Assembly: GCF_037042905.1 (NCBI RefSeq)
Contig: NC_087254.1
Span: 20,398,001 to 20,462,000, forward strand
DNA length: 64,000 bases
Direction: 5' to 3'
From: Lytechinus pictus
Taxonomy: Eukaryota
Position 1 is the first letter of the stretch. Each line of letters opens with the position of its first letter. The position numbers were made by a program, and so were the translations under genes. Shown piece by piece: positions 2,024 through 16,599 of this stretch. The notes under the pieces are model-generated. The model was not told where the DNA came from. It searched no databases and was given only the letters and a program-made list of their open reading frames with translations.

Positions 2024-3207
2024 CGATGATGAAAGTTAACCGATAGCACAGGCGAAGTCATAAATTTTCAACCGGAGGGGGGTGGCATGCGAGGTAGCGA
2101 ATCTACCGTCTATGCCTGGCATATATGGGAAAAGATCTTTTTGTCTTTGCTTGATTAAAAAAAACTTTCTGAATGAAATATTGGATTTTCTGTAAAATTT
2201 AAATGCAAAGTTAAAGCTAGGGAGACTATTATGTTGGTCAAAGACTGCATCCCCGAAAATACGCAATGCCTATAAGCGATTGATTTGTTATCTTCACCTG
2301 TGTGCAGCTGAATATTTTGAACTATACAGTATATTCATTGCAGTGAACGGGTGAGAAAATTTGCAAATTTTACTAGTGAAGATTTACATTTTAAGCCCAT
2401 GGTGAACAATAAATACTGAACTGGAAGAATAGTTACACATATTCAGCAATGAAACTGCACACGATGCAACACCATTTAGAGATTAATAAAAATGCAGTGT
2501 GCGAGCGAGGTATATATAGGCGACCAAGCAATTAAAATCCTTTTAATTTTTTACCCTCTGAACCTCCAATGCCATAAACAGTATGATAAGACATCTTAAT
2601 GAACATGCATGGTGAAAGGGGCGTTTTACGTAAGTGAATTTTCATAATGTTTTTTCAAACACGTAAACAAAATGATTTCGTTTCTATATAAAAATATATA
2701 ATCTTACTAATTGAAATTGTGGTGTATTTTGATTTGTAACATCCTGGGAGATGATTCGAGGGACCAACAATTTTAAGAAATCCCTGCCTATATGCTACAC
2801 ACTCAATAAATTGATTATTGTATAATATTAGGTGAAAAGTAGTTTCGTTTTTTGGTGTCCACAACAATCTGTTGGCCTTGCTACTGTATACCCCCCCCCC
2901 CACACACACACTTTCTCCTATTCACCTGCATTGATTGAATCTTTTTAGAGTGAGCATGCATTCGTACTTGATGGTTTCATGTCCTGAAGAATATCAGTAA
3001 AAATAAAGACATCATAATGTTCAGATAATGTTCATTTATTTGACATCCTTTTTAAAAACATACAAACATATAAACATATATAAATTTACATTTGCAATTG
3101 AATATTGACATAGACGTGTTTAAATCATGTAAATTATACACTGAAATGGTATCTAAACAGTAAAATATTAAAAAAAACAGTAAAAACTACTTCAGAAATA
3201 TACTCAC

Positions 3208-3327
3208 GAATATTATTAGATACCGAATGGTAATGTACAGGGACCGATAGAAAGCACGTATAAGGCAATCCGATTAAAACAGCCAACACGGCATCTGTAG
3301 CAGCGACATCACCAGCAAGAACACAAA
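3208..3327 (-). other. Probable non-coding 5' UTR exon of the minus-strand membrane protein gene
   Basis: Minus-strand acceptor cttgtctttccAG (3329-3328) and donor GTGAGT (3207-3202) bracket a 120-nt, more GC-rich segment. Confidence 0.4.
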
Positions 3328-3480
3328 CTGGAAAGACAAGACCTCTGTGTCATTAAATTGATAAGGTTAAGTAATACAATTGCTTTCCATGTATCAAAGA
3401 CACTGTCCAAAATTCCCCCTTGATATTGCAGTCAACTTGCAGATCCATTTTTATATGCCATGTCCAGATGTCATACATAA

Positions 3481-3798
3481 TATGGCGCGCCGTTTGACCA
3501 ATAATTCAGATAAACACTTTTTATCGCCGATAAACAGTGTTTATCGCCGAAAAACAGTGTTTATCGAGCGATAAACACTGTTTATCAAGCGATAAACACT
3601 GTTAATCGAGAGAAACTGTGTTTTTCAGTCGATAAACATAGTTTCTCTCGATAAACACTGTTTTTCGGCGATAAACACTGTTTATCTGATTTATTGGGCA
3701 AATGGCGCGCACTCGTACTCTAGATCCTGCAGTGCCGTACGTATCACCGTATGCACTGTACTAGCTACTCTAGATCTCCACGTGCGTGCGCCGGCACC
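3481..3798 (+). repeat. Left terminal inverted repeat with ~9 palindromic ~20-bp units (CGATAAACASTGTTTATCG)
   Basis: Tandem units at ~3509-3687, flanked by an outer end (3481) and an inverted inner pseudo-end (...TTATTGGGCAAATGGCGCGC, ending 3710). Confidence 0.9.
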
Positions 3799-4822
3799 AC
3801 GTTTTAAATTATTAAAAATACTGCCCTGTTGTTGGGATGGACCTGTTTAACTAGATTCTCTTGATCTTGAGCAGAATTTTAGCCAACTCCAGGTAAGTCC
3901 CAGATCTGATATTCCCATATTTCTGCTACATCTTTCTGGCGCAATTCCGAAAGCCGTCTGGAATCATTAATCAAACGGTCAGTCGGGTACGATTCTGGGT
4001 CTTGACTTGGTCTTGGGTTGGGGCCCCTAATCCCTATATCTATGCCGTGCTATGGCATGGGCTGGCGCGGCCGCGCCCGTCTGCAGGCCTGGTCCCGGGA
4101 GCGCAGGCAGCCCGGTCGGTCGTTCAATTCCGCAAGCGAGACGCGATCGCGACTGCTAGCTAGCTACAGTAGCTAGTTAGATATAACCGTCTGGTATGAT
4201 ATGGGTCATTCTTTAATAAAATTGACATTTGCTACCCTGGCCCGAGGGGGGAGGGGGGGGGGGTATGGGGGATCCGGATGGTACCGATCTTGTAAGTTGT
4301 ACTTGTAGTTGTACCACATAGACTCTATATCATTACATGGCCACACATGCGCACACGTCATAACAATTGAGTGAATGCATGGCACACTCAGTGAGTTTAA
4401 AAGTCACTCTCATTTGTTGCATGTGTACTACTTTGTGCACTAATTGAAACTATAAGTAGGCCTAGGCCTACACATGAGTGACTCTTGCGTTTTGTTTGCT
4501 TAATCAATGAATGAGCTGTTATCTATGCAAAAGGGAATAGTCTAGAACTAGAATAGAAGCCCAGAAACTTGCTTTTGCCCAACTTTGGCCAGTTTGGGAC
4601 GATTACGTGGTGTTATGAAAGGAGAATGAAACTCTTGGAGCAAGTTAGCTTTTGTGAAAGCAGAAAAATCAAAGAATAAGATCAACAAAAGTTTGAGTAA
4701 AATAGGACTAGCAATAGAAGAGTTATGAGCATTTGAATGTCGAGATCACTAATGCTATGGAGATCCTCTCATTGGCAACGCAACCAAGATCTATGATATC
4801 ACAGACGAACAACTCTCCCCTT

Positions 4823-5953: not shown

Positions 5954-6307
5954 CTCCCCTTTTGGACACTGAAAATATACCCCAAAACATCTCTTTTTAC
6001 TCATTCTAATCATATGACAAACGATTCATCAATGATATAATGTTGTGAAACCTCTGTACTTGTCCTCTCATAAAGAGAACACCTCACCTTGTGATAGATT
6101 CTATAAAAGTGAGAATATAAGTGAAATAAGTACTAAAGCAATGAGGGAGTTGTACGTGTGTGACATCACAGATCTTGGTCGCATTGCCAATGGGAGGATC
6201 TACATGGCATGATCTCAATATTCAAATGCTCATAACTTTCTTATTATTCATTCAATCTTCCTCAAACTTTCAACAATATGTTTCTTTGATTTTTCTCTTT
6301 GATATGG

Positions 6308-7922
6308 TGTCACTACAGCAGTGTGTAGTGATGTTATATTCTCTCATCCAATCTTCATCAAGAGTCTGATTATCAAGACTATACCACCAAAGAGGTATAT
6401 GTTTCCCCAGAAGGTGTGACTCACCGCTAATAGTAGAGTAATTTCATTGTTCTCCAACTTCTCTCCAAGAATATCTTCTTGGAAGTAAAGATAACTTTCA
6501 TTCTCATAGTCAGAGTGATGGAGTAAAGTACTACTCACAATCAGTTGCAGAAAGTTCAAGTAAATTGTTATTTGTGGACAACTACAAAGGCCCAATTCGG
6601 TAAGAACATATTTCATATAATATTGTTTTGATATTTAACATGGTAAATATATTGTAGAATTCATATTACTATTTAAGATAGTTTTGAATGTTTTTAGTTA
6701 GAGAAGATTATGTGTTTGTGTTAACAGAGTGTAATACGTATATTGCATAGTGTAGGAAAGTTGATTTCTTTGTTGTACAGTTTAGTATATTTGAGGAATA
6801 GGTGAATATACTGATGTTGATAGATCTCATAATATTGTTCTTGTATAATACATTTCCATCTAGAAGTGCTAAGATGTAAAAGGCTTTTAAATACAATGAA
6901 TTAGTTGGGTGTAATTATACATAAAGCAAGAAGTCTAGTTTCATTGGGAAACAAAGAGAGTCTGTTTTTGCTAATCCAGTAGAAGCAGGGTCTATGAATG
7001 ACTACTTTGGAATGTGGCCCCTTTCACATTCACCCCTTTTTACTTTCTCTTTTGAGTAGATAAATTACTGCACGTTGTAAATGCAGGGCTTGTTCACATT
7101 TGTATTTTAATCTGGTTTAACTTTAATCTTAAGATAGAATAATGTTATGCTGTTTCGTTATAAGCTGAGTTAGTGTAATAGTAGGAACTATTACTAGTTT
7201 GTTTTCTTATTATACTCTAATCATCTCTAAAGAGTTACTTCTTTAGTTTCATGTTTAACTTGTGATAATGTAGATTACTGTTCGTACATGGCCAATTTGT
7301 TATTAAGAACAAAACCATAACTTTCGTGGAGAGAAAGACCTTTCCTCTGGGAGTGATTTAGGGAGAAACCTTGAATGAATGACTGTGTTGGCATGTAGTT
7401 ATGTTCACCCGGCCAATATCTATTGGGTAGAATACTTAGTAGTGCACAGCACAAAGTGAGTGTAGATGTGTTCATACGAGGATTTAATCAATAGATTAAC
7501 TTTATTCCTTGTATATTTTATACTCTATTAAATTAGGTTAATGTTATAAGGTATAATAGTACAAGTGTATGATGATCACTTATATTAGTGTCAGATTAAT
7601 TCTCATTTAATCATATGTAATCGTAATTGTTGTACTAACTTAGATTTAGTAATTGACATGATTTCAAGATGAAACATTTGTTTATTATTGTTTGTTTATT
7701 CATTATCATTACAGATTGTTATCTGAAGGTGCATAGAAGTATAACTGAAAGTACGACTGAAGTTTGTCACCAGTGTTGGAGATTAACTGAATAAAGCGAA
7801 AGTTTGTTTTATTTCAACAAGTCGAGTCCAGCATTGATTGATTCCTTGTGCCTTGTGAATAACAATAGTTGGACATAAGTAGACGAAACTCCTTCGTAGA
7901 AAGTTTTACGAAGGCAGTCACA
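6308..7922 (+). repeat. 5' LTR (1615 bp)
   Basis: TGTCACTACAGC...GGCAGTCACA. Three ORF-track peptides recur identically at offset 7684. AATAAA at 7790-7795. Confidence 0.97.
6600..7714 (+). other. Predicted intron inside the LTR (copy in 3' LTR at 14284-15398)
   Basis: Donor TCG|GTAAGA at 6600, AT-rich interior, TACTAAC at 7633-7639, T-rich tract and acceptor TTACAG| at 7714. Confidence 0.6.
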
Positions 7923-7934
7923 ATAACAATCGAA
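7923..7934 (+). promoter_or_regulatory. Non-tRNA primer-binding position ATAACAATCGAA, complementary to the predicted LTR splice junction
   Basis: Immediately follows the LTR-terminal CA and lacks the TGG of tRNA PBSs. Its reverse complement TTCGATTGTTAT equals 6596-6599 joined to 7715-7722. Confidence 0.6.
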
Positions 7935-8031
7935 CGGACAACTTGTGTCGTCCAGTCAGGATCACGTTCAGAAAGTTCTGGAATCATCCAAACATACTAC
8001 TTGGAACTTTACTGCCCAAAAGTTTTTCATC

Positions 8032-11000
8032 ATGGCCAACATAGATGGAAAAAATCTAGTCAGCGAGGCTACACGTGTAGATCTTCAGAGGACGTCCTCT
8101 TCGCTGCCAGAAATGATGGATAAGTATCCAAAACCAGCTAGGAGTCTAGCAAGCAGAAAATCAGCCAAAAGCGAGATGCTTATTAAGGCCTTTCAGGCTG
8201 AACTTGATGTTATGGACAAAGAGGACAACATAAAGATTCTGCAAAGGGAGCATGAACAAGCAATGCAGTTGGAGAGAGCCCAGATGGAGCTGAAACGGTT
8301 GAAGCTGCAGAAAGAACATCAGCAGAAATTAGCCGAACTTGCAGAATCAGAAGATGAGCTCTCAAACACCAGTATCAAGTTTCCAGAGGAGACGAAGGAG
8401 GAGTCTGTTCAAAGATTCTTTGAATCTCAATCGACGGATGAGGGCAAGATCCAGACCCAAGCCCCACCAGTTCCAGCCACTCTGAGTGAAGTGAAGCATG
8501 AACCAACCAACGCTTCACCAGGAATGGAAAACGTGGTTGAGTCACTTGCCAAGGTAGCCAACATGATGCTGAATCAAAATGCGACTAGTCAACAAGTATT
8601 GGCAGCCAGTCAGTTACCAAAGGTGGATGTTCCGGTATTTAATGGTGACCCATTACGATATCCCCTCTGGAGAAATGCATTTTCAAGTTTCGTTGACTCC
8701 AAGCCTCTAGATGCCGCAACCAAGCTTCATATGTTGCATACATATGTTACTGGTGAACCAAAGAAGGTCGTGGAGCATTATCTTCTTCTTGGCACCGATG
8801 AAGCTTACCTGAAAGCTAGGGAGTCTCTCGCCAATAGGTATGGCAACACCAGTGTAGTTTCATCAGCGTTCATGAAGAAGTTGAACTCATGGCCGAGAAT
8901 CTCAGACCGGGATCCAAGTGGATTGCGGTCATTTGCGGACTTTCTTCAGCAGGTCAGCGTTGCCAAGGAGACTGTTGACTCCCTTGGCATTCTCGATTAT
9001 CCGCAGGAGAACGTCAAGCTGTTGAGGAAGGTTCCATTCTACCTTGAACGCAAATGGAGAGACGAGGTGACCAAGTGGCAGCGATGTGGATATGGCAGTT
9101 ACCCTACCTTTGCCAGATTTGTAGACTTCGTCACCAGTGCAGCAGAAGTGGCCAATATTCCAGAGTTGGAATACACCAGGTTAGACGAGGCGAAAGTAAA
9201 GTCAGCACCTCCGAAAGGGAAGACCTTTCAAGGTCGGTCACTGTCTACAACAGCCGCACATGGAAAGGAGTATTCATCATGTCCTTACTGTGATAAGGAC
9301 CATCACATCGATGACTGCCCAGAGTTCAAGCAGATCTACTACAAGGATAAGAAGACGTTCTTCTTCAAGAAGTATCTGTGTATGGGATGTGGCCAAAGTA
9401 GCAACCACTTTGGGAAGGACTGCAAGCAACGCCGGGAATGTAAAAAGTGTAAGGGAACCCACTTGACATGCCTACACCGACAGAAGATAGAAAAATCATC
9501 GGCTAGCTCAAACTGTACCAACATCTGCGATCTTCCTGACCAAGATGGAAAGGACCATTGTATGATTGTGCCGGTTTGGGTGAGGCAAGCTGATGATCCA
9601 TCGAGGGAATTCCTAGAATATGCGATCCTCGACGACCAGTCCAATGTTGGATTTGTCTCCAGTGGTCTTTGCGACAGAATGGGTGTTAAAGGACCTGAGA
9701 CTGATCTTTTGCTTACAACAATGCACGAGAGTGCTCAGATTAGCTGTCAAAAGATTAGTGGTCTTGAGGTCTTGGACTTCCAAAAGTCTACAGTTGTCCA
9801 ACTCCCGTCCTGCTACACCAGACAAGAGGTTCCGGCCAAGCGGTCACAAATTCCCAAGGCAGAAGTTCTGAGGAAATGGAGGCATCTAGCACCAATCGCA
9901 GATGAGTTGATGCCATACAACCCGTCAATTAAGGTTTCCTTGCTCATAGGAAACAACTGTCCTAGAGCGATTCGACCCCGAGAAGTACTCGCTGGTGCAG
10001 AAGACGACCCGTATGCGATGAAAACTTCACTCGGATGGGGCGTTGTCGGCAGAGTATGTCAGAGTTCTCAAAGTGATGATGCCGTCTGCCACAGGATTCA
10101 GACAAGTGAAGGATATCCCCACTTGGTGCACTCAAGCCAAGCGAAGGAAGTGTTTGCACCAGAGTCTGTACTGAAGATCTTGGAACGAGACTTCCAAATG
10201 ACAAGTCCAAAAGGAGCTCCACTCTCAGTGAAAGAAACAAGGTTCATGACAATCTTGGAGGATGGAATCCGCAAGAGAAGTGATGGACACTACCAAATGC
10301 CCTTGCCCTTGAAGTCAGATCAGGTGACCTTTCCTGACAACAAGATTCTTGCTGTTAAAAGATGGAGACAGCTATCTGCAAGATTTAGGAAGAACCAGAA
10401 GTTTCTGGATGACTACAAGACCTTCATGGATGATGTAATCACCAACTACGCAGAACGAGTACCAGATGACTGCTTGAAGGTTCGAGATGGCAGAGTAAAC
10501 TATATTCCGCACACAGGGGTGTACCATCCTCACAAGCCTGACAAAATCCGTGTTGTATTCGACTGTTCAGCAAAATTTGAAGGCGTATCCTTGAATGATC
10601 ATCTTCTGCAAGGTCCTGACCTGATGAATGGACTACTTGGTGTTCTGTGCCGATTCCGAAAGGAAGAAGTTGCCTTCATGGCTGATGTGAAAGGAATGTT
10701 CCTTCAGTTCTACGTAGATGAAGAAGACCGGAACTTGCTGCGGTTCCTGTGGTATGAAGGCGGTGACGAAACAAAGGAAGCTGTTGAATACCGGATGAAG
10801 GTTCATCTCTTCGGAGCAGCTAGTTCTCCAGGATGCAGTAACTTTGGACTGAGAAGGGCTGCAACAGATGGTGAAGAAGAGTTTGGTTCAAGTGCAGCAG
10901 AGTTCATTCGTAGAGACTTCTACGTAGATGACGGTCTTAGTTCACGACCTACTGCGGAAGAGGCTGTGCAGCTGCTGAAAAACAGTCAAGCAATCTGTGC

Positions 11001-13641
11001 AAAATCAGGACTGAAATTGCACAAGATTGTGTCTAACAGCAGAGAAGTTCTGAAAAGCTTTCCAGCAGATGAACGAGCAAAAAGCCTGCAAGACCTGGAT
11101 TTAGATGTCGACAAGCTTGTGCTGGAAAGAGTTCTAGGAGTGTCCTGGAACATTGAGAATGACACCTTCAACTTTAGAGTGCAGGTGAAGGCAAGCTCAT
11201 TCTCCAGACGAGGTGTTCTCTCAACGATCAGTTCAATCTATGATCCAAGCGGCTTTCTTGGTCCAGTAGTTCTTAAAGGCAAGAGGATTCTCCAAGCTAT
11301 GTGCAAGCAGAACATGGACTGGGACGAATCTATGACCGATGAACAGCGTTCAGAATGGGATAAATGGCTGCTTGATCTCCAGCATCTAGGTGACCTCCAA
11401 CTCAAGAGATGCTACAAACCAAGTAGGTTCGGCAAGGTCAAGCAGGTAGAAGTCCACCATTTCTCTGATGCCAGTCAGGATGGGTATGGGCAATGTTCAT
11501 ATCTCCGTCTCATCAATGAGGATGACAAAGTGCATTGTTCATTCGTAATCGGAAAGGCCCGAGTTACTCCATTGAGACCAATTACTATTCCAAGACTGGA
11601 GCTAACAGCAGCAACATTGTCAGCCAAGAGCAGCACATTCCTGAAGTCGGAACTGGAATACGATTCTGTGAAGGAGTTCTTCTGGACAGACAGCAAGGTT
11701 GTTCTTGGATACATAAAAAATGAAGCCAGGCGGTTTCATATCTTCGTTGCCAACAGAGTTCAGACAATCCGAGAGCAGACTGACCCTGATGCATGGTACT
11801 ATGTTGATACCAAGGAGAATCCTGCTGATGGAGCTTCTCGAGGAATCTCAGCAAAGGAGCTCACTTCTAGCCACTGCTGGTTTCAAGGCCCAGATTTCCT
11901 GTGGAATGATGGTTTGTTTGCACCCCCAGGAGATGATCCATGTACGGTAGATGACCACGACCCAGAGGTGAAGCATGCCTCAGTCCTGAGAACAGAAGCA
12001 ACCACCAAGGTCAGTACAGGGCAATTTGAATCCAACCGTTTGAATTGCTTCTCCAGTTGGCACTTTGCCAAGAAGGCAGTAGCCAGATGTATACAGCTGA
12101 AGACGAGTCTGAAGAAAAGGGCTAACCAGCATACCAGAACGAGGTCTAGATCAGTGGAAGCAACGATCCCTAAGGTTGTGACAGTGAGTGAGCTGCAGGA
12201 AGCTGAGAAGGTCATCATTAGAGGTTTACAACAAGAAAACTTCACGCAGGAGCTGCAGATTCTTAAAGAACTAGATAAGACAGGAGAAATGAGTAGACAT
12301 GAAGTACCTACTCGAAATGCGGCACTGAAGAAAACCAGTGCCCTCTTCAGATTGGACCCGTTTCTAGATGATGACGGGGTGATTCGAGTCGGCGGCCGGA
12401 TACATCGCGCCAATTTGTCCAGTAACATTAGACATCCAGTGATTATTCCTCGTAAGAGTCATGTCACAACACTGCTGATCCGAGATGCTCATCACAGGAC
12501 CCAACATAGTGGTAGAGGCATTACTCATAATGAGCTACGTCAGAGAGGATACTGGGTGATAGGAGGAGTGTCTGCAGTTTCACAATGCATCTCGTCCTGT
12601 GTGACATGTCGACGATTGCGAGGACAGCCCCTCCAACAAAAGATGGCAGATCTTCCAGAAGAAAGAGTTGAGCCTTCTCCACCATTCTCGTATTGTGCAG
12701 TGGACTATTTTGGACCCTTTCTTATCAAGGAAAGACGGAGTGAAGTCAAGAGATATGGTGTGCTCTTCACATGTCTGTCTTCAAGAAGTGTACACCTGGA
12801 AACTGCCAACAGTCTTAGTAGCAGTGCATTCATCAACGCTTTGCGGCGTTTCATGAATCGACGGGGTGCTGTAAGGCATCTACGCTCTGACCAGGGTACA
12901 GCATTCATTGGAGCCAGAAACGAGTTGAAGGAAGCGCTGTCTGAAATGGACCAGGGAAAGGTACAAGAGTACCTGCTTGAGAATGGATGTGACTGGATAC
13001 CATTCAAGATGAATGTGCCCCATGCCTCTCATATGGGTGGAGTTTGGGAGAGGCAGATTCAGTCAGTGCGACGTGCACTAGAGCCATTGCTGAAATCATC
13101 TGGGAGTCAACTTGATGATGAGGCCTTCAGAACCTTCATGACCGAAGCAGAAGCCATAATCAACTCCAGGCCATTGACGACAACCAATCTAAGTGACAGT
13201 GAAGCACCAGAACCACTGACCCCTCATCATATCTTGACTGCCAAGCCCAAAGTCATATTACCCCCACCAGGAGTCTTCCAGCGCGAAGATGTGTACTCTA
13301 GGAAGTGGTGGAGACGCGTCCAACACCTCGCCAATGAGTTCTGGCTACGATGGAGGAAAGAATATTTGCAGGGACTGCAAGAGCGTAGAAAATGGACAAG
13401 TACAGAAAAAGACTTAACGATAGGTGATATTGTAATCTCCAAAGAAGAGGAGGGAGGACGATACAAGTGGCCCTTAGCTAGGGTGATAGATGTATATCCT
13501 AGTGCCGATGGTAGAATTAGGAAGGTAAAACTTCTAATGGCTGATGGACAGTTAGATAAGAATGGCAAACGCCAGAGCCCACCAACTAAATTCGACAGAC
13601 CAGTAAACAAGTTAGTTCTTCTGTTACCCAATCAACAGTAA
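8032..13641 (+). CDS. BEL/Pao Gag-Pol polyprotein (1869 aa from first ATG; frame open from 7945): Gag (DUF1759-like, three Cys/His knuckles), aspartic protease, RT, RNase H, integrase
   Basis: LPKVDVPVFNGDPLRYPLW; CPYCDKDHHIDDC, CMGCGQSSNHFGKDC, CKKCKGTHLTCLH; protease AILDDQS; RT KIRVVFDCS...FYVDDGL; RNase H HHFSDAS...WTDS...NPAD; integrase H...H...CVTC, DYFGP, SDQG, WERQI. Domain order PR-RT-RH-IN. Confidence 0.97.
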   Translation: MANIDGKNLVSEATRVDLQRTSSSLPEMMDKYPKPARSLASRKSAKSEMLIKAFQAELDVMDKEDNIKILQREHEQAMQLERAQMELKRLKLQKEHQQKLAELAESEDELSNTSIKFPEETKEESVQRFFESQSTDEGKIQTQAPPVPATLSEVKHEPTNASPGMENVVESLAKVANMMLNQNATSQQVLAASQLPKVDVPVFNGDPLRYPLWRNAFSSFVDSKPLDAATKLHMLHTYVTGEPKKVVEHYLLLGTDEAYLKARESLANRYGNTSVVSSAFMKKLNSWPRISDRDPSGLRSFADFLQQVSVAKETVDSLGILDYPQENVKLLRKVPFYLERKWRDEVTKWQRCGYGSYPTFARFVDFVTSAAEVANIPELEYTRLDEAKVKSAPPKGKTFQGRSLSTTAAHGKEYSSCPYCDKDHHIDDCPEFKQIYYKDKKTFFFKKYLCMGCGQSSNHFGKDCKQRRECKKCKGTHLTCLHRQKIEKSSASSNCTNICDLPDQDGKDHCMIVPVWVRQADDPSREFLEYAILDDQSNVGFVSSGLCDRMGVKGPETDLLLTTMHESAQISCQKISGLEVLDFQKSTVVQLPSCYTRQEVPAKRSQIPKAEVLRKWRHLAPIADELMPYNPSIKVSLLIGNNCPRAIRPREVLAGAEDDPYAMKTSLGWGVVGRVCQSSQSDDAVCHRIQTSEGYPHLVHSSQAKEVFAPESVLKILERDFQMTSPKGAPLSVKETRFMTILEDGIRKRSDGHYQMPLPLKSDQVTFPDNKILAVKRWRQLSARFRKNQKFLDDYKTFMDDVITNYAERVPDDCLKVRDGRVNYIPHTGVYHPHKPDKIRVVFDCSAKFEGVSLNDHLLQGPDLMNGLLGVLCRFRKEEVAFMADVKGMFLQFYVDEEDRNLLRFLWYEGGDETKEAVEYRMKVHLFGAASSPGCSNFGLRRAATDGEEEFGSSAAEFIRRDFYVDDGLSSRPTAEEAVQLLKNSQAICAKSGLKLHKIVSNSREVLKSFPADERAKSLQDLDLDVDKLVLERVLGVSWNIENDTFNFRVQVKASSFSRRGVLSTISSIYDPSGFLGPVVLKGKRILQAMCKQNMDWDESMTDEQRSEWDKWLLDLQHLGDLQLKRCYKPSRFGKVKQVEVHHFSDASQDGYGQCSYLRLINEDDKVHCSFVIGKARVTPLRPITIPRLELTAATLSAKSSTFLKSELEYDSVKEFFWTDSKVVLGYIKNEARRFHIFVANRVQTIREQTDPDAWYYVDTKENPADGASRGISAKELTSSHCWFQGPDFLWNDGLFAPPGDDPCTVDDHDPEVKHASVLRTEATTKVSTGQFESNRLNCFSSWHFAKKAVARCIQLKTSLKKRANQHTRTRSRSVEATIPKVVTVSELQEAEKVIIRGLQQENFTQELQILKELDKTGEMSRHEVPTRNAALKKTSALFRLDPFLDDDGVIRVGGRIHRANLSSNIRHPVIIPRKSHVTTLLIRDAHHRTQHSGRGITHNELRQRGYWVIGGVSAVSQCISSCVTCRRLRGQPLQQKMADLPEERVEPSPPFSYCAVDYFGPFLIKERRSEVKRYGVLFTCLSSRSVHLETANSLSSSAFINALRRFMNRRGAVRHLRSDQGTAFIGARNELKEALSEMDQGKVQEYLLENGCDWIPFKMNVPHASHMGGVWERQIQSVRRALEPLLKSSGSQLDDEAFRTFMTEAEAIINSRPLTTTNLSDSEAPEPLTPHHILTAKPKVILPPPGVFQREDVYSRKWWRRVQHLANEFWLRWRKEYLQGLQERRKWTSTEKDLTIGDIVISKEEEGGRYKWPLARVIDVYPSADGRIRKVKLLMADGQLDKNGKRQSPPTKFDRPVNKLVLLLPNQQ

Positions 13642-13991
13642 TTATTCCCACTCAAAATCCACAGTAGTAAAGTGGAAGTATCCCATTTGTCTCGCGAAAG
13701 ACTCGGAGCTTTCCCCCTCAAAGAGCCATTATCTTTTACATTTTCATTTAACGATGATATAAATGATGCGTTTAAATTGTTGTTTTTCTTTTCATGTATG
13801 GTTCAGTGATAATTCTAAAGGCTAGAATGCTGTTTTAAAGGTTGCATTGTGTGTATGTATCCATTGGGTATAGTATTGGTCAAAGTATTGTTTAAGATTA
13901 ATTTGTATTATGATGTGGTATAATTTGTTGTACTTTATATTCGTAATAATTGAAGCTAATTTAGTAAATGTAGGTACATTTAAAGGAGCCA

Positions 13992-15606
13992 TGTCACTAC
14001 AGCAGTGTGTAGTGATGTTATATTCTCTCATCCAATCTTCATCAAGAGTCTGATTATCAAGACTATACCACCAAAGAGGTATATGTTTCCCCAGAAGGTG
14101 TGACTCACCGCTAATAGTAGAGTAATTTCATTGTTCTCCAACTTCTCTCCAAGAATATCTTCTTGGAAGTAAAGATAACTTTCATTCTCATAGTCAGAGT
14201 GATGGAGTAAAGTACTACTCACAATCAGTTGCAGAAAGTTCAAGTAAATTGTTATTTGTGGACAACTACAAAGGCCCAATTCGGTAAGAACATATTTCAT
14301 ATAATATTGTTTTGATATTTAACATGGTAAATATATTGTAGAATTCATATTACTATTTAAGATAGTTTTGAATGTTTTTAGTTAGAGAAGATTATGTGTT
14401 TGTGTTAACAGAGTGTAATACGTATATTGCATAGTGTAGGAAAGTTGATTTCTTTGTTGTACAGTTTAGTATATTTGAGGAATAGGTGAATATACTGATG
14501 TTGATAGATCTCATAATATTGTTCTTGTATAATACATTTCCATCTAGAAGTGCTAAGATGTAAAAGGCTTTTAAATACAATGAATTAGTTGGGTGTAATT
14601 ATACATAAAGCAAGAAGTCTAGTTTCATTGGGAAACAAAGAGAGTCTGTTTTTGCTAATCCAGTAGAAGCAGGGTCTATGAATGACTACTTTGGAATGTG
14701 GCCCCTTTCACATTCACCCCTTTTTACTTTCTCTTTTGAGTAGATAAATTACTGCACGTTGTAAATGCAGGGCTTGTTCACATTTGTATTTTAATCTGGT
14801 TTAACTTTAATCTTAAGATAGAATAATGTTATGCTGTTTCGTTATAAGCTGAGTTAGTGTAATAGTAGGAACTATTACTAGTTTGTTTTCTTATTATACT
14901 CTAATCATCTCTAAAGAGTTACTTCTTTAGTTTCATGTTTAACTTGTGATAATGTAGATTACTGTTCGTACATGGCCAATTTGTTATTAAGAACAAAACC
15001 ATAACTTTCGTGGAGAGAAAGACCTTTCCTCTGGGAGTGATTTAGGGAGAAACCTTGAATGAATGACTGTGTTGGCATGTAGTTATGTTCACCCGGCCAA
15101 TATCTATTGGGTAGAATACTTAGTAGTGCACAGCACAAAGTGAGTGTAGATGTGTTCATACGAGGATTTAATCAATAGATTAACTTTATTCCTTGTATAT
15201 TTTATACTCTATTAAATTAGGTTAATGTTATAAGGTATAATAGTACAAGTGTATGATGATCACTTATATTAGTGTCAGATTAATTCTCATTTAATCATAT
15301 GTAATCGTAATTGTTGTACTAACTTAGATTTAGTAATTGACATGATTTCAAGATGAAACATTTGTTTATTATTGTTTGTTTATTCATTATCATTACAGAT
15401 TGTTATCTGAAGGTGCATAGAAGTATAACTGAAAGTACGACTGAAGTTTGTCACCAGTGTTGGAGATTAACTGAATAAAGCGAAAGTTTGTTTTATTTCA
15501 ACAAGTCGAGTCCAGCATTGATTGATTCCTTGTGCCTTGTGAATAACAATAGTTGGACATAAGTAGACGAAACTCCTTCGTAGAAAGTTTTACGAAGGCA
15601 GTCACA
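13992..15606 (+). repeat. 3' LTR (1615 bp)
   Basis: Same sequence as the 5' LTR; preceded by a short purine tract AAAGGAG (13982-13988). Confidence 0.97.
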
Positions 15607-16599
15607 TATGGATTCAGCTGGTTTCAAGGGTTTCATTCTCCTTTAATATTAGTAATATAGCCTAGATCAGGGACGTGATAGAGAAGGACTGGAATCAAGC
15701 CGCTCTCCTTTGACCCCATGCTCCATGCCGCCGAAAAGTTATGCGCTAATCTGCAACTGTTTGACCAGGTGGTGAGATAAAAGAGGGCATGAAATTTCAG
15801 GATTTAGAATTCCTACATCAGAAAATGGTATCCCAGCAACTGTTCGCTGTCCCTTTCAATGATTTCTCATCCATTGTTGAATGTGTAAAGAGTAGAACAA
15901 GCGAACACAAACTTGTGTAATTTCATCCTTTTTTTAACTTCAAAAATATAAAAAACACGCGAAAACACGCATTAGCAAACTTAATGTTATTAAAGATTGT
16001 AAATCATGGATTAAATAACGGGACATTAGAACATGCACAAATTAGCGCATTATCCTAAAATATTGAGTTTTTGTCAGGATGTAATTTTTCTTTTACCAAC
16101 TCATGCACACAAATTTTAGGAAGGACGGAGTACTAAATTTGAAAATTTGTTTGATGCACTATTCCCAATACAATCCCCAAATAAAGTTTTTGATATACAC
16201 TGAAATTTTGCCGGTAATTTAATATTTTGTAATAAATGTAAAACTGGTGCCTGGCTTCCGAAAGTCCCCGCAGTGGAAGCGCGGTTCGGAGCATGGAACT
16301 TCAAAGCCAAGTGGAATGTTACACATCCCATTGTTACGCTTTAGAACTCACGAATGCGTTTGAATAAATTACCAGAGTTTCACCTCCTTTCTCTCACCTC
16401 CCTGCCTAGATCTAGATCTAGAGTCTAGAGACAGAGTCTAGTTAGTAGGGTCTAGATCTAGGCCAGGCCTAGTAGTACTATTAGTGTTAGCATGATTTAT
16501 TAGTGTGTGTGTGTTTAGGTCTAGATCTATATTTTTTAGTAATCTACATTATAAATAATGTTGTATAAAATTAGAGGGAAGGCATGCATAGGGACATGT

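What the first reader, a model, noticed from the sequence alone, without database searches (positions are those of the whole stretch)
6596..7934. Splicing-dependent self-priming: the PBS is complementary to an exon-exon junction formed inside the LTR
Seen: the 12 nt directly after the 5' LTR (7923-7934, ATAACAATCGAA) lack the TGG expected for pairing with a tRNA CCA end. The LTR has a donor (..CCAATTCG|GTAAGA, 6600) and an acceptor (..TTACAG|ATTGTTATC, 7714). Joining them creates TTCG|ATTGTTAT, the exact reverse complement of those 12 nt (4 nt from the upstream exon, 8 from the downstream one). The 3' end of the duplex (T7722) pairs with A7923, flush with the LTR-terminal CA, where minus-strand synthesis must start. 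Known: fission yeast Tf1 self-primes by pairing its transcript 5' end with the PBS and cleaving it, with no splicing involved. Inference: the spliced leader folds onto the PBS and is cut after 7722 to give the primer. Sequence from 7723 to the poly(A) site (AATAAA at 7790) serves as R for strand transfer, and the intron is inherited from an unspliced 3' LTR copy (14284-15398). This would couple host splicing to reverse transcription; I know of no description of it for BEL/Pao elements.
Basis: partly seen in the sequence, partly recalled or inferred. Interest (0 to 1): 0.95.

Follow-up and report, generated by a model that had tools for sequence, protein, structure and literature searches.

The report
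Splice-junction self-primer in sea-urchin retrotransposons
A young BEL/Pao retrotransposon of a sea urchin, like its relatives, seems to start reverse transcription from its own leader RNA instead of a host tRNA, and the full 11-13-base primer sequence exists only after an intron inside the LTR is spliced out.

Summary
The 12 nt after the 5' LTR (7923-7934) are the exact reverse complement of TTCG (6596-6599) joined to ATTGTTAT (7715-7722). These flank a GTAAGA...Y-tract-CAG intron inside a 1615-nt LTR.

It is not chance. Nine intron-bearing elements carry five exon-2 8-mers and several exon-1 ends. They come from six families in this genome, Diadema, Strongylocentrotus and one unidentified organism. 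In each, the PBS is complementary over only 9 nt to unspliced DNA but over 11-13 nt to the predicted junction. Exon-1-specific positions show compensatory changes. Intronless relatives, including a sea anemone element, have the same 11-12-nt complement uninterrupted, as in Tf1.

Splicing at exactly these sites is documented at the DNA level. Intronless copies exist in four families here: three solo LTRs (one checked, with an intact TSD) and one palindromic element. Lytechinus variegatus has a full-length element with both LTRs intronless.

tRNA priming is excluded by the covariation and by the lack of TGG. RNA-seq was uninformative because no sense reads were found. The transcription start, the cut after 7722 and priming itself remain inferred.

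I found no description of self-priming in BEL/Pao. ICTV states tRNA priming.

The parts
6303..6307 (+). Target-site duplication TATGG (second copy at 15607-15611)
   Evidence: direct reading of both LTR flanks
6308..7922 (+). 5' LTR, 1615 nt, TGT...ACA, 100% identical to the 3' LTR
6497..6530 (+). Conserved block with an initiator-like TCATTCT about 100 nt upstream of the donor. It is a candidate transcription start region (inferred only).
   Evidence: conserved in Lytechinus fam1 and fam2, L. variegatus and S. purpuratus. The palindromic fossil L079 shows an exon 1 of at least 73 nt.
6582..6599 (+). 3' end of LTR exon 1 (conserved block ...CTACAAAGGCCCAATTCG). The last 4 nt, TTCG (6596-6599), pair with PBS nt 9-12.
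   Evidence: this block is an island of conservation in otherwise diverged LTRs
6600..7714 (+). Spliceosomal-type intron inside the LTR (GTAAGA ... T-rich tract ... CAG), 1115 nt
   Evidence: Homologous introns of 126-1155 nt occur in 9 elements. The fam1 intron is precisely absent from solo LTR L082.
7715..7722 (+). First 8 nt of LTR exon 2 (ATTGTTAT), pairing with PBS nt 1-8. The inferred primer 3' end is T7722. The conserved CT at 7723-7724 follows the inferred cut.
   Evidence: perfect covariation with the PBS in all 13 elements; the 8-mer is followed by CT
7790..7795 (+). Poly(A) signal AATAAA. The stretch from 7723 to about 7815 is the inferred R used for minus-strand transfer.
   Evidence: an AATAAA-type signal (ATTAAA in some) lies downstream of the acceptor in most families
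7889..7918 (+). U5 hairpin (CCTTCGTA / TACGAAGG stem) between the conserved GAAACTCC and GGCAGYCACA, directly upstream of the PBS
   Evidence: RNAalifold on 12 elements gives 11 pairs, 7 with compensatory changes
7923..7934 (+). Primer-binding site ATAACAATCGAA, flush with the LTR-terminal CA. Identical in the sister family, where similarity stops after nt 12.
8032..13641 (+). Intact gag-pol ORF (1869 aa) of a BEL/Pao element
   Evidence: (Peptidase_A17, DUF1759, DUF5641, Integrase_H2C2)
13982..13991 (+). Polypurine tract region AAAGGAGCCA directly upstream of the 3' LTR
   Evidence: the same ...RGGAGCCA|TGT motif appears in relatives
13992..15606 (+). 3' LTR, with its intron copy at 14284-15398

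Best explanation
This is an intact, recently active BEL/Pao LTR retrotransposon of a sea urchin; the best protein match, at 98%, is Lytechinus pictus. It belongs to a clade that does not use a tRNA primer. Instead it self-primes as fission-yeast Tf1 does: a short stretch of its own LTR-derived leader RNA pairs with the PBS flush against U5. That stretch is presumably cut after ...UAU, before the conserved CU, and its 3' end primes minus-strand DNA.

In the sea-urchin families, and in one unidentified organism, the self-primer sequence is interrupted by a spliceosomal intron inside the LTR. The last 3-5 nt of a cap-proximal LTR exon 1 and the first 8-9 nt of exon 2 form the full 11-13-nt complement only after splicing. 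Here that means 6599 joined to 7715.

After the cut, the template would begin at 7723. Strong-stop DNA (7723-7922) would transfer through the R stretch (7723 to the poly(A) site after AATAAA at 7790). It would then copy the unspliced 3' LTR, which regenerates exon 1, the intron and the acceptor. When the 3' LTR copy is spliced too, the progeny carry intronless LTRs.

Shown here: the anatomy, the covariation and the in-vivo use of the splice sites (as DNA fossils). Inferred: the transcription start in exon 1, the cleavage, the priming, and priming in cis rather than in trans.
For: 1. Complementarity. In all 9 intron-bearing elements with a known donor, the complement is 9 nt contiguous but 11-13 nt across the junction. 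Three intronless relatives have 11-12 nt contiguous.

2. Covariation. PBS positions 1-11 are Watson-Crick paired in 12/12 or 13/13 elements, with 2-3 pair types at 10 of the 11 positions. Each PBS against its own LTR gives runs of 11-13; cross-family pairings average 3.5 with a maximum of 9.

3. Junction-specific compensatory changes. Exon 1 TTCG pairs with PBS CGAA in Lytechinus fam1/fam2 and S. purpuratus. TTTG pairs with CAAA in Diadema, which has the same exon-2 8-mer. ATTTG pairs with CAAAT in the L061 family. CAAT pairs with ATTG in L095, where the acceptor G does not pair at all.

4. Conservation. The donor block and the acceptor block are islands of identity in LTRs that are otherwise about 74% identical or unalignable. 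In the sister family the PBS is identical for exactly 12 nt and then diverges.

5. Splicing fossils. Junction patterns of 23-24 nt found intronless DNA copies in four families, against 0 control hits. L082 and L083 are solo LTRs. L084 is a solo LTR with an intact 5-bp TSD. L097 is a full-length L. variegatus element with both LTRs intronless. L079 is a palindrome made of the spliced leader from U5 back to at least 73 nt of exon 1, joined to PBS-gag.

6. A covarying U5 hairpin lies next to the PBS.

7. The junction duplex is 1.6-5.2 kcal/mol more stable than the unspliced one.

8. No tRNA signal was found.
Against: There is no RNA evidence. Three stranded total-RNA runs showed only low antisense coverage from other copies and no junction reads. 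Only about 6% of each run was read.

The transcription start is not mapped.

The roughly 75 nt upstream of the acceptor are more conserved than a 3' splice site needs, and some families have TATA-like motifs about 25 nt upstream of the CAG. A second start at the acceptor, with a 9-nt Tf1-like primer, therefore cannot be excluded as a parallel route.

The C:G to T:A compensatory change is a pair of CpG-decay transitions, which are individually frequent.

Single-sequence MFE folds include the junction:PBS helix in only 2 of 9 leaders.

The model requires the 5' LTR intron to be spliced while the 3' copy stays unspliced, or priming in trans. This was not tested.
Confidence: 0.72

Rival explanations
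1. Tf1-like self-priming without splicing. Genomic RNA starts at or next to the CAG (about 7713-7715), and its first 8-9 nt pair with the PBS. The LTR intron is a separate feature of U3, for example regulatory, whose removal in the 3' LTR occasionally yields intronless progeny.
For: Nine nt pair without splicing in every family. The distance from the acceptor to AATAAA and to U5 is what a classical start of R would have. There is strong conservation and some TATA-like motifs upstream of the CAG. Intronless relatives carry the complement contiguously. Solo LTRs and L097 could arise from 3' LTR splicing alone.
Against: It does not explain why PBS nt 10-13 match the end of exon 1 in four different sequence versions, including L095 where the acceptor G is unpaired. 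At pre-specified homologous donors the joint chance is roughly 1e-5 to 1e-6. It leaves intron-bearing elements with 9 bp while all intronless relatives keep 11-12 bp. The L079 palindrome centres in exon 1, not at the acceptor.
Confidence: 0.15
2. The spliced RNA primes in trans. An unspliced genomic RNA is the template, and a separate spliced, cleaved leader RNA is the primer, possibly co-packaged. Splicing and templating would then occur on different molecules.
For: It uses the same complementarity and covariation data as the best explanation. It removes the need for one molecule to be spliced in its 5' LTR but not its 3' LTR.
Against: No data distinguish cis from trans. The conserved UAU|CU context and the Tf1 precedent favour an intramolecular fold-back. 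A trans primer still needs the same cut.
Confidence: 0.08
3. A host RNA (a tRNA fragment or other small RNA) is the primer, and the match to the LTR is coincidental.
For: TTCGATT resembles a T-loop, and some elements (copia, Ty5) use internal tRNA fragments (general knowledge). ICTV describes BEL/Pao as tRNA-primed (PMC8742986).
Against: No PBS starts with TGG. The 12-mer occurs 122 times against 152 for the control, and no tRNA lies at any of the 28 sites scanned. Six families in one genome have five PBS 8-mers, each matched by its own LTR.
Confidence: 0.02
4. Chance complementarity in an AT-rich LTR.
For: Many GT and AG dinucleotides (135 and 121) give many possible splits.
Against: Only 0.4% of control words reach 12 nt. 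The pattern recurs with different sequences in 13 elements.
Confidence: 0.01

Closest known systems
Tf1 (Schizosaccharomyces pombe) and the Tf1/sushi group: self-priming of reverse transcription
   Same: There is no tRNA PBS. An 11-13-nt stretch of the element's own leader RNA is complementary to the PBS and flush with U5. A structured U5 hairpin lies next to the PBS. An endonucleolytic cut is needed to create the primer 3' end. The nucleotides removed with the primer are restored from the 3' LTR copy.
   Different: Tf1 is a Ty3/gypsy chromovirus, whereas this is BEL/Pao (Peptidase_A17, DUF1759, DUF5641). In Tf1 the complement is the first 11 nt of the transcript and no splicing is involved. 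Here the complement spans an exon-exon junction inside the LTR and is preceded by an exon 1 that, in the one family where it can be gauged (the L079 fossil), is at least 73 nt.
Predicted self-priming in the plant Tcn1 (Ty3/gypsy) and TAR (Ty1/copia: Houba, Osr-1) lineages (PMC6317226)
   Same: These are sequence-based predictions of self-priming from PBS complementarity to the element's own LTR.
   Different: They belong to different superfamilies, have a contiguous complement, and no intron is involved.
Canonical BEL/Pao (Belpaoviridae, Semotivirus) replication as summarised by ICTV (PMC8742986)
   Same: Protein domains, LTR ends TG..CA, 5-bp TSD, and a PPT before the 3' LTR.
   Different: ICTV describes an 18-nt PBS complementary to tRNA-Arg or tRNA-Gly and tRNA-primed replication. 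This clade has an ATA-type 11-13-nt PBS complementary to its own LTR.
Retroviruses with the major splice donor inside R of the LTR (for example HTLV-1/BLV and foamy viruses; from general knowledge, not tested here)
   Same: A splice donor lies inside the LTR and is used on 5' LTR transcripts.
   Different: Their acceptors lie in the body of the genome and produce subgenomic mRNAs. Priming is by tRNA, and the intron is not contained within the LTR.
Intronless relatives found here: Actinostola element (L089) and the contigs L096 and L093
   Same: They share the U5 architecture (GAAACTCC hairpin, then GGCAGYCACA) with minor departures in L096. They have an ATA-type PBS. In L089 and L096 the primer stretch ends ...TAT followed by CT, and L093 ends it one nucleotide earlier (...GTTA then ACT). 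Their proteins are 55-61% identical to this one.
   Different: Their LTRs are short (257 nt in L089, about 290-330 nt in the others) and have no intron. The 11-12-nt complement is contiguous. This is probably the ancestral arrangement.

Membership tests
BEL/Pao (Belpaoviridae) | Pao-type aspartic peptidase (Peptidase_A17) within a gag-pol polyprotein | tested here: met
   PF05380 with E=3.7e-46, plus DUF1759 (gag), Integrase_H2C2 and DUF5641
BEL/Pao (Belpaoviridae) | LTRs with TG..CA ends and a 4-6-bp target duplication | tested here: met
   TGT...ACA ends and TSD TATGG
BEL/Pao (Belpaoviridae) | 18-nt PBS complementary to the 3' end of a host tRNA (ICTV profile) | tested here: not met
   no TGG, no tRNA at genomic matches, and the PBS covaries with the element's own LTR
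Tf1-type self-priming (mechanism) | PBS complementary to the element's own leader RNA, with the duplex flush against U5 | tested here: met
   11-13 nt in 12 elements, with compensatory changes
Tf1-type self-priming (mechanism) | The complement is the extreme 5' end of the transcript | tested here: inconclusive
   No transcription start data. The L079 fossil indicates at least 73 nt of exon 1 upstream of the junction. This probably differs from Tf1.
Tf1-type self-priming (mechanism) | RNase H cut of the leader creates the primer 3' end | not testable with these tools
   The only indirect hint is the ...TAT|CT context in 12 of the 13 elements
Tf1-type self-priming (mechanism) | Structured U5 stem-loop adjacent to the PBS | tested here: met
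   7 of 11 pairs have compensatory changes
Tf1/sushi clade (phylogenetic membership) | Ty3/gypsy chromovirus polyprotein | tested here: not met
   BEL/Pao domains only
Spliceosomal intron | GT-AG borders, a donor fitting GTRAGT, and a pyrimidine tract before CAG | tested here: met
   donors GTAAGA or GTAAGT and T-rich tracts in 9 elements
Spliceosomal intron | Precise removal in vivo | tested here: met
   intronless DNA copies joined exactly at the predicted sites in 4 families and 2 species, with 0 control hits
Spliceosomal intron | Junction reads in RNA-seq | tested here: inconclusive
   no sense-strand reads over the element in the three runs sampled

The most novel reading that the evidence does not exclude
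Splicing of an intron contained in the LTR is an obligatory step in starting reverse transcription. Only the cap-proximal (5' LTR) copy is spliced efficiently, which creates the primer. The unspliced 3' copy carries the intron to the next generation. The host spliceosome would thereby license retrotransposition and tell the two identical LTRs apart. Self-priming would be ancestral to a BEL/Pao clade spanning cnidarians and echinoderms, contrary to the textbook tRNA priming of this family.
Probability: 0.55. Interest if true: 0.9.

Novelty: new variant of a known kind. Interest (0 to 1): 0.86.

Why it matters
Initiation of reverse transcription is one of the defining steps of LTR retroelements. 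For BEL/Pao it has only been assumed to be tRNA-primed.

These data indicate a self-priming BEL/Pao clade. This third superfamily with self-priming would suggest the mechanism is older or arises more readily than thought.

The data also show a primer that exists only as an exon-exon junction, which I have not found described for any retroelement. If confirmed, four things follow:
- It links host splicing directly to retrotransposition.
- It offers a mechanism for treating the 5' and 3' LTR differently.
- It explains how an intron can persist inside an LTR through RNA-mediated replication.
- Automated PBS annotation based on tRNA libraries would systematically miss such elements.

Tried and rejected
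RNA evidence. Over the element it gave only low antisense coverage from other copies. Library polarity was calibrated from strand-specific A>G changes in the flanking repeat. There were no joints and no read-start pile-ups. This says nothing for or against splicing. X1 behaves like DNA.

tRNA primer. The 12-mer is not enriched in the genome, and no tRNA was found at the 28 loci checked. I rejected this explanation.

More families from this genome. The L075 and L080 donors therefore lie outside the DNA held.

Other taxa. The fish element L090 has no LTR complement to its post-LTR sequence (a 7-nt chance match only). LTRs of the Clytia element L091 could not be delimited. P0003 returned no DNA and P0015 was not on record.

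Thermodynamic folding. Single spliced leaders show the junction:PBS helix in the MFE in only 2 of 9 cases. I treat this as neutral, because the duplex is AU-rich and would need a chaperone.

Other checks. A third GGCAGTCACA in the window (1496) is a chance match with no LTR context. Seven literature searches plus three papers read found no description of BEL/Pao self-priming or of a splice-junction primer. The library holds open-access papers only.
Full report
**1. The element**

Window 6308-15606 is a complete LTR retrotransposon. It has two 1615-nt LTRs (6308-7922 and 13992-15606) that are 100% identical, begin with TGT and end with ACA, and are flanked by the 5-bp duplication TATGG. A single intact ORF (8032-13641, 1869 aa) carries Peptidase_A17 (the Pao peptidase), DUF1759, Integrase_H2C2 and DUF5641. 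It is therefore BEL/Pao. The closest database protein, at 98% identity, is from the sea urchin Lytechinus pictus. The genome holds at least four full-length copies with open frames of 1904-1906 aa. The family is young.

**2. The observation**

- The 12 nt after the LTR are ATAACAATCGAA (7923-7934).
- Exon 1 ends ...CCAATTCG at 6599 and is followed by GTAAGA.
- A T-rich tract and CAG end at 7714 and are followed by ATTGTTATCT.
- Joining 6599 to 7715 gives TTCG|ATTGTTAT, the exact reverse complement of the PBS, with T7722 opposite A7923.
- AATAAA is at 7790.

One refinement is needed. The G of the acceptor CAG equals the last G of exon 1. So 9 nt (7714-7722) are complementary without splicing, and splicing adds 3.

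I tested 3000 control 16-mers from the element's interior against this LTR. Only 0.4% reached 12 or more nt by any GT-AG split, and 0.7% reached 9 or more nt contiguously.

**3. A sister family**

A second family in the same genome has LTRs about 74% identical and about 1265 nt long.
- It has the identical 12-nt PBS, and similarity to the window stops immediately after nt 12.
- The acceptor region is almost perfectly conserved.
- A 25-nt block around the donor (CTACAAAGGCCCAATTCG|GTAAGAA) is invariant within a poorly conserved LTR 5' half.

**4. Covariation**

A gag search of the genome found many more BEL/Pao families. In every locus that reached the LTR end, the LTR ends GGCAG[CT]CACA and is followed by an ATA-type PBS. 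The first 8 nt of that PBS are the reverse complement of the 8 nt that follow a Y-tract-CAG about 145-230 nt upstream. The 8-mers are:

| Family | Exon-2 8-mer |
|---|---|
| fam1, fam2 | ATTGTTAT |
| L059 | TATATTAT |
| L060 | TATTCTAT |
| L061 | AATGTTAT |
| L074, L075 | TATTTTAT |

Each 8-mer is followed by CT.

A homologous donor block, AAAG(G)CC(T)CCAATTG|GTAAG, lies 203-1115 nt further upstream, and its last nucleotides extend the complement.

| Exon-1 end | PBS nt 9 onward | Total complement | Families |
|---|---|---|---|
| TTCG | CGAA | 12 | fam1, fam2 |
| ATTTG | CAAAT | 13 | L061 |
| TTG | CAA | 11 | L059, L060, L074 |

L074 also pairs at PBS nt 13-14, so 13 of its 14 positions match the junction.

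Other species behave the same way.

| Element | Donor | Acceptor and exon 2 | PBS | Complement |
|---|---|---|---|---|
| S. purpuratus L088 | GGCCCAATTCG&#124;GTAAGA | ATTGTTAT | ATAACAATCGAA | 12 |
| Diadema antillarum L087 | GGCCCGAATTTG&#124;GTAAGA | ATTGTTAT | ATAACAATCAAA | 12 |
| L095 (unidentified organism) | GCAACAAT&#124;GTAAGT, 126-nt intron | cgacag&#124;AATTGTCATCT | ATGACAATTATTG | 13 spliced, 9 unspliced |

Diadema has the same exon-2 8-mer as S. purpuratus, but T:A where the others have C:G at the exon-1-specific position. In L095 the acceptor G does not pair.

Across 12-13 elements, PBS positions 1-11 are Watson-Crick paired without exception, with two or three pair types at ten of the eleven positions. 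Each PBS against its own LTR gives runs of 11-13 nt. Cross-family pairings average 3.5 nt with a maximum of 9.

**5. Intronless relatives**

Three more distant relatives have proteins 55-61% identical to this one. They are an Actinostola sea-anemone element (L089) and two contigs from unidentified samples (L096, L093). They have short LTRs (257 to about 330 nt), a similar U5 end and PBS type, and no intron. Their complement is contiguous and 11-12 nt long.

The complement is therefore about 11-13 nt throughout the clade. In the intron-bearing members that length is reached only across the splice junction. This argues that the spliced RNA is the pairing partner. It also suggests that a Tf1-like contiguous self-primer is the ancestral state.

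**6. The splice is real**

I searched the genome for the predicted exon-exon junctions, using patterns of 23-24 nt with up to 2 mismatches. Reversed-pattern controls gave 0 hits, and about 0.01 hits are expected by chance. The search found intronless DNA copies in four families.
- L082 is a full fam1 solo LTR, from TGTCAC to CACA, that lacks exactly 6600-7714.
- L083 is the same for an L061-like family.
- L084 is an L060-family solo LTR with an intact TSD ACAAA.
- L079 is an element whose 5' side is a 463-nt palindrome. It consists of the reverse complement of U5-exon 2-junction-exon 1, a 21-nt loop, and then the same sequence forward, running on into PBS and gag. The arms end exactly at the LTR-terminal CACA and include at least 73 nt of exon 1.
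- In L. variegatus, a full-length element (L097) has both LTRs intronless at the predicted junction.

Such copies can only arise by reverse transcription of spliced RNA. The L079 structure looks like a snap-back of strong-stop DNA made on a spliced 5' leader. If so, the RNA 5' end lies about 85-95 nt upstream of the donor. A conserved initiator-like block (TCATTCT, window 6498-6504) lies about 100 nt upstream of the donor in four sea-urchin elements. The transcription start is nevertheless only inferred.

**7. Other supporting anatomy**

- A hairpin between the conserved GAAACTCC and GGCAGYCACA, directly upstream of the PBS, is supported by compensatory changes at 7 of 11 pairs. This is analogous to the U5 stem-loops of Tf1 and retroviruses.
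- A poly(A) signal follows the acceptor in most families. This leaves a short R downstream of the inferred cut for strand transfer.
- The PPT motif ...RGGAGCCA|TGT is conserved.

**8. Exclusions**

A host tRNA cannot explain five PBS 8-mers in one genome, each matching its own LTR. No PBS has TGG. The 12-mer occurs 122 times against 152 for the control, and none of the 28 sites scanned is a tRNA.

A start site at the acceptor with a 9-nt primer remains possible as a parallel route. It does not account for the exon-1-specific pairs.

**9. What is missing**

RNA-seq gave no sense reads over the element. The few reads are antisense and come from diverged copies. Library polarity was set from strand-specific A>G changes in the flanking repeat. 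Junction reads, the start site, the cut after 7722 and priming itself are therefore unobserved. MFE folding of single leaders is not decisive.

**10. Known or new**

Self-priming is established for Tf1 and the Tf1/sushi group, and predicted for the plant Tcn1 and TAR lineages (PMC6317226). For BEL/Pao, the ICTV profile states an 18-nt tRNA-Arg or tRNA-Gly PBS and tRNA-primed replication (PMC8742986). The main BEL/Pao survey does not discuss the PBS at all (PMC3118150).

No paper in the searchable library describes self-priming in BEL/Pao or a primer formed by splicing. Two other first-stage notes of this scan raise the same idea for other pieces of this genome. They are consistent with the families analysed here but are not independent evidence.

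**11. Verdict**

I classify it as a new variant of a known kind: Tf1-type self-priming, in a new superfamily, with the primer split by an LTR intron. It is of high interest, pending RNA and strong-stop DNA evidence.

Noticed in passing
window 6210-6307 (continues after the 3' LTR at 15607 onward): The element is inserted in a repeat that is very highly represented in RNA on both strands. The RNA reads show strand-specific A>G (RNA of the + strand) and T>C (RNA of the - strand) changes at about 10 sites. This looks like ADAR-type hyperediting of a dsRNA-forming repeat.
   Followed up: no
L079 (G000 C14:27583951-27587628), oriented positions 369-831: A 463-nt palindrome made of the spliced LTR leader (U5-exon 2-junction-exon 1), with a 21-nt loop, followed by PBS and gag. 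The arms end exactly at CACA. It is probably an integrated snap-back product of minus strong-stop DNA, and it hints at the RNA 5' end.
   Followed up: partly
L097 (Lytechinus variegatus, GCA_018143015.1 CM031017.1), LTRs 3097-3945 and 11225-12087: A full-length L060-type element whose two LTRs (863 nt, 98.3% identical) both lack the intron precisely. It is a natural intron-loss derivative with a contiguous 11-nt self-complement.
   Followed up: partly
L063 (G000 C2:20032664-20036716), about 260 nt upstream of the gag ATG: A tandem duplication of the R-U5 segment just before the PBS in one copy of the L061 family. It may be another aberrant reverse-transcription product.
   Followed up: no
window 7859-7866: A second copy of PBS nt 1-8 (ATAACAAT) lies inside U5. 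It is conserved as GAATAACAA in the sister family and as AATAACAAC in L093. It does not change with the PBS in families that have other 8-mers.
   Followed up: partly
window 7640-7714: The last roughly 75 nt of the LTR intron are nearly invariant between families whose LTRs are otherwise 74% identical. This is more than a branch point and pyrimidine tract need. It could hold regulatory sites or a second promoter.
   Followed up: no
L090 (Brachyhypopomus gauderio element): A fish BEL/Pao relative (44% protein identity) with 584-nt identical LTRs and TSD CTTCC. It has neither a TGG-type PBS nor an LTR complement, so its primer is unexplained.
   Followed up: partly
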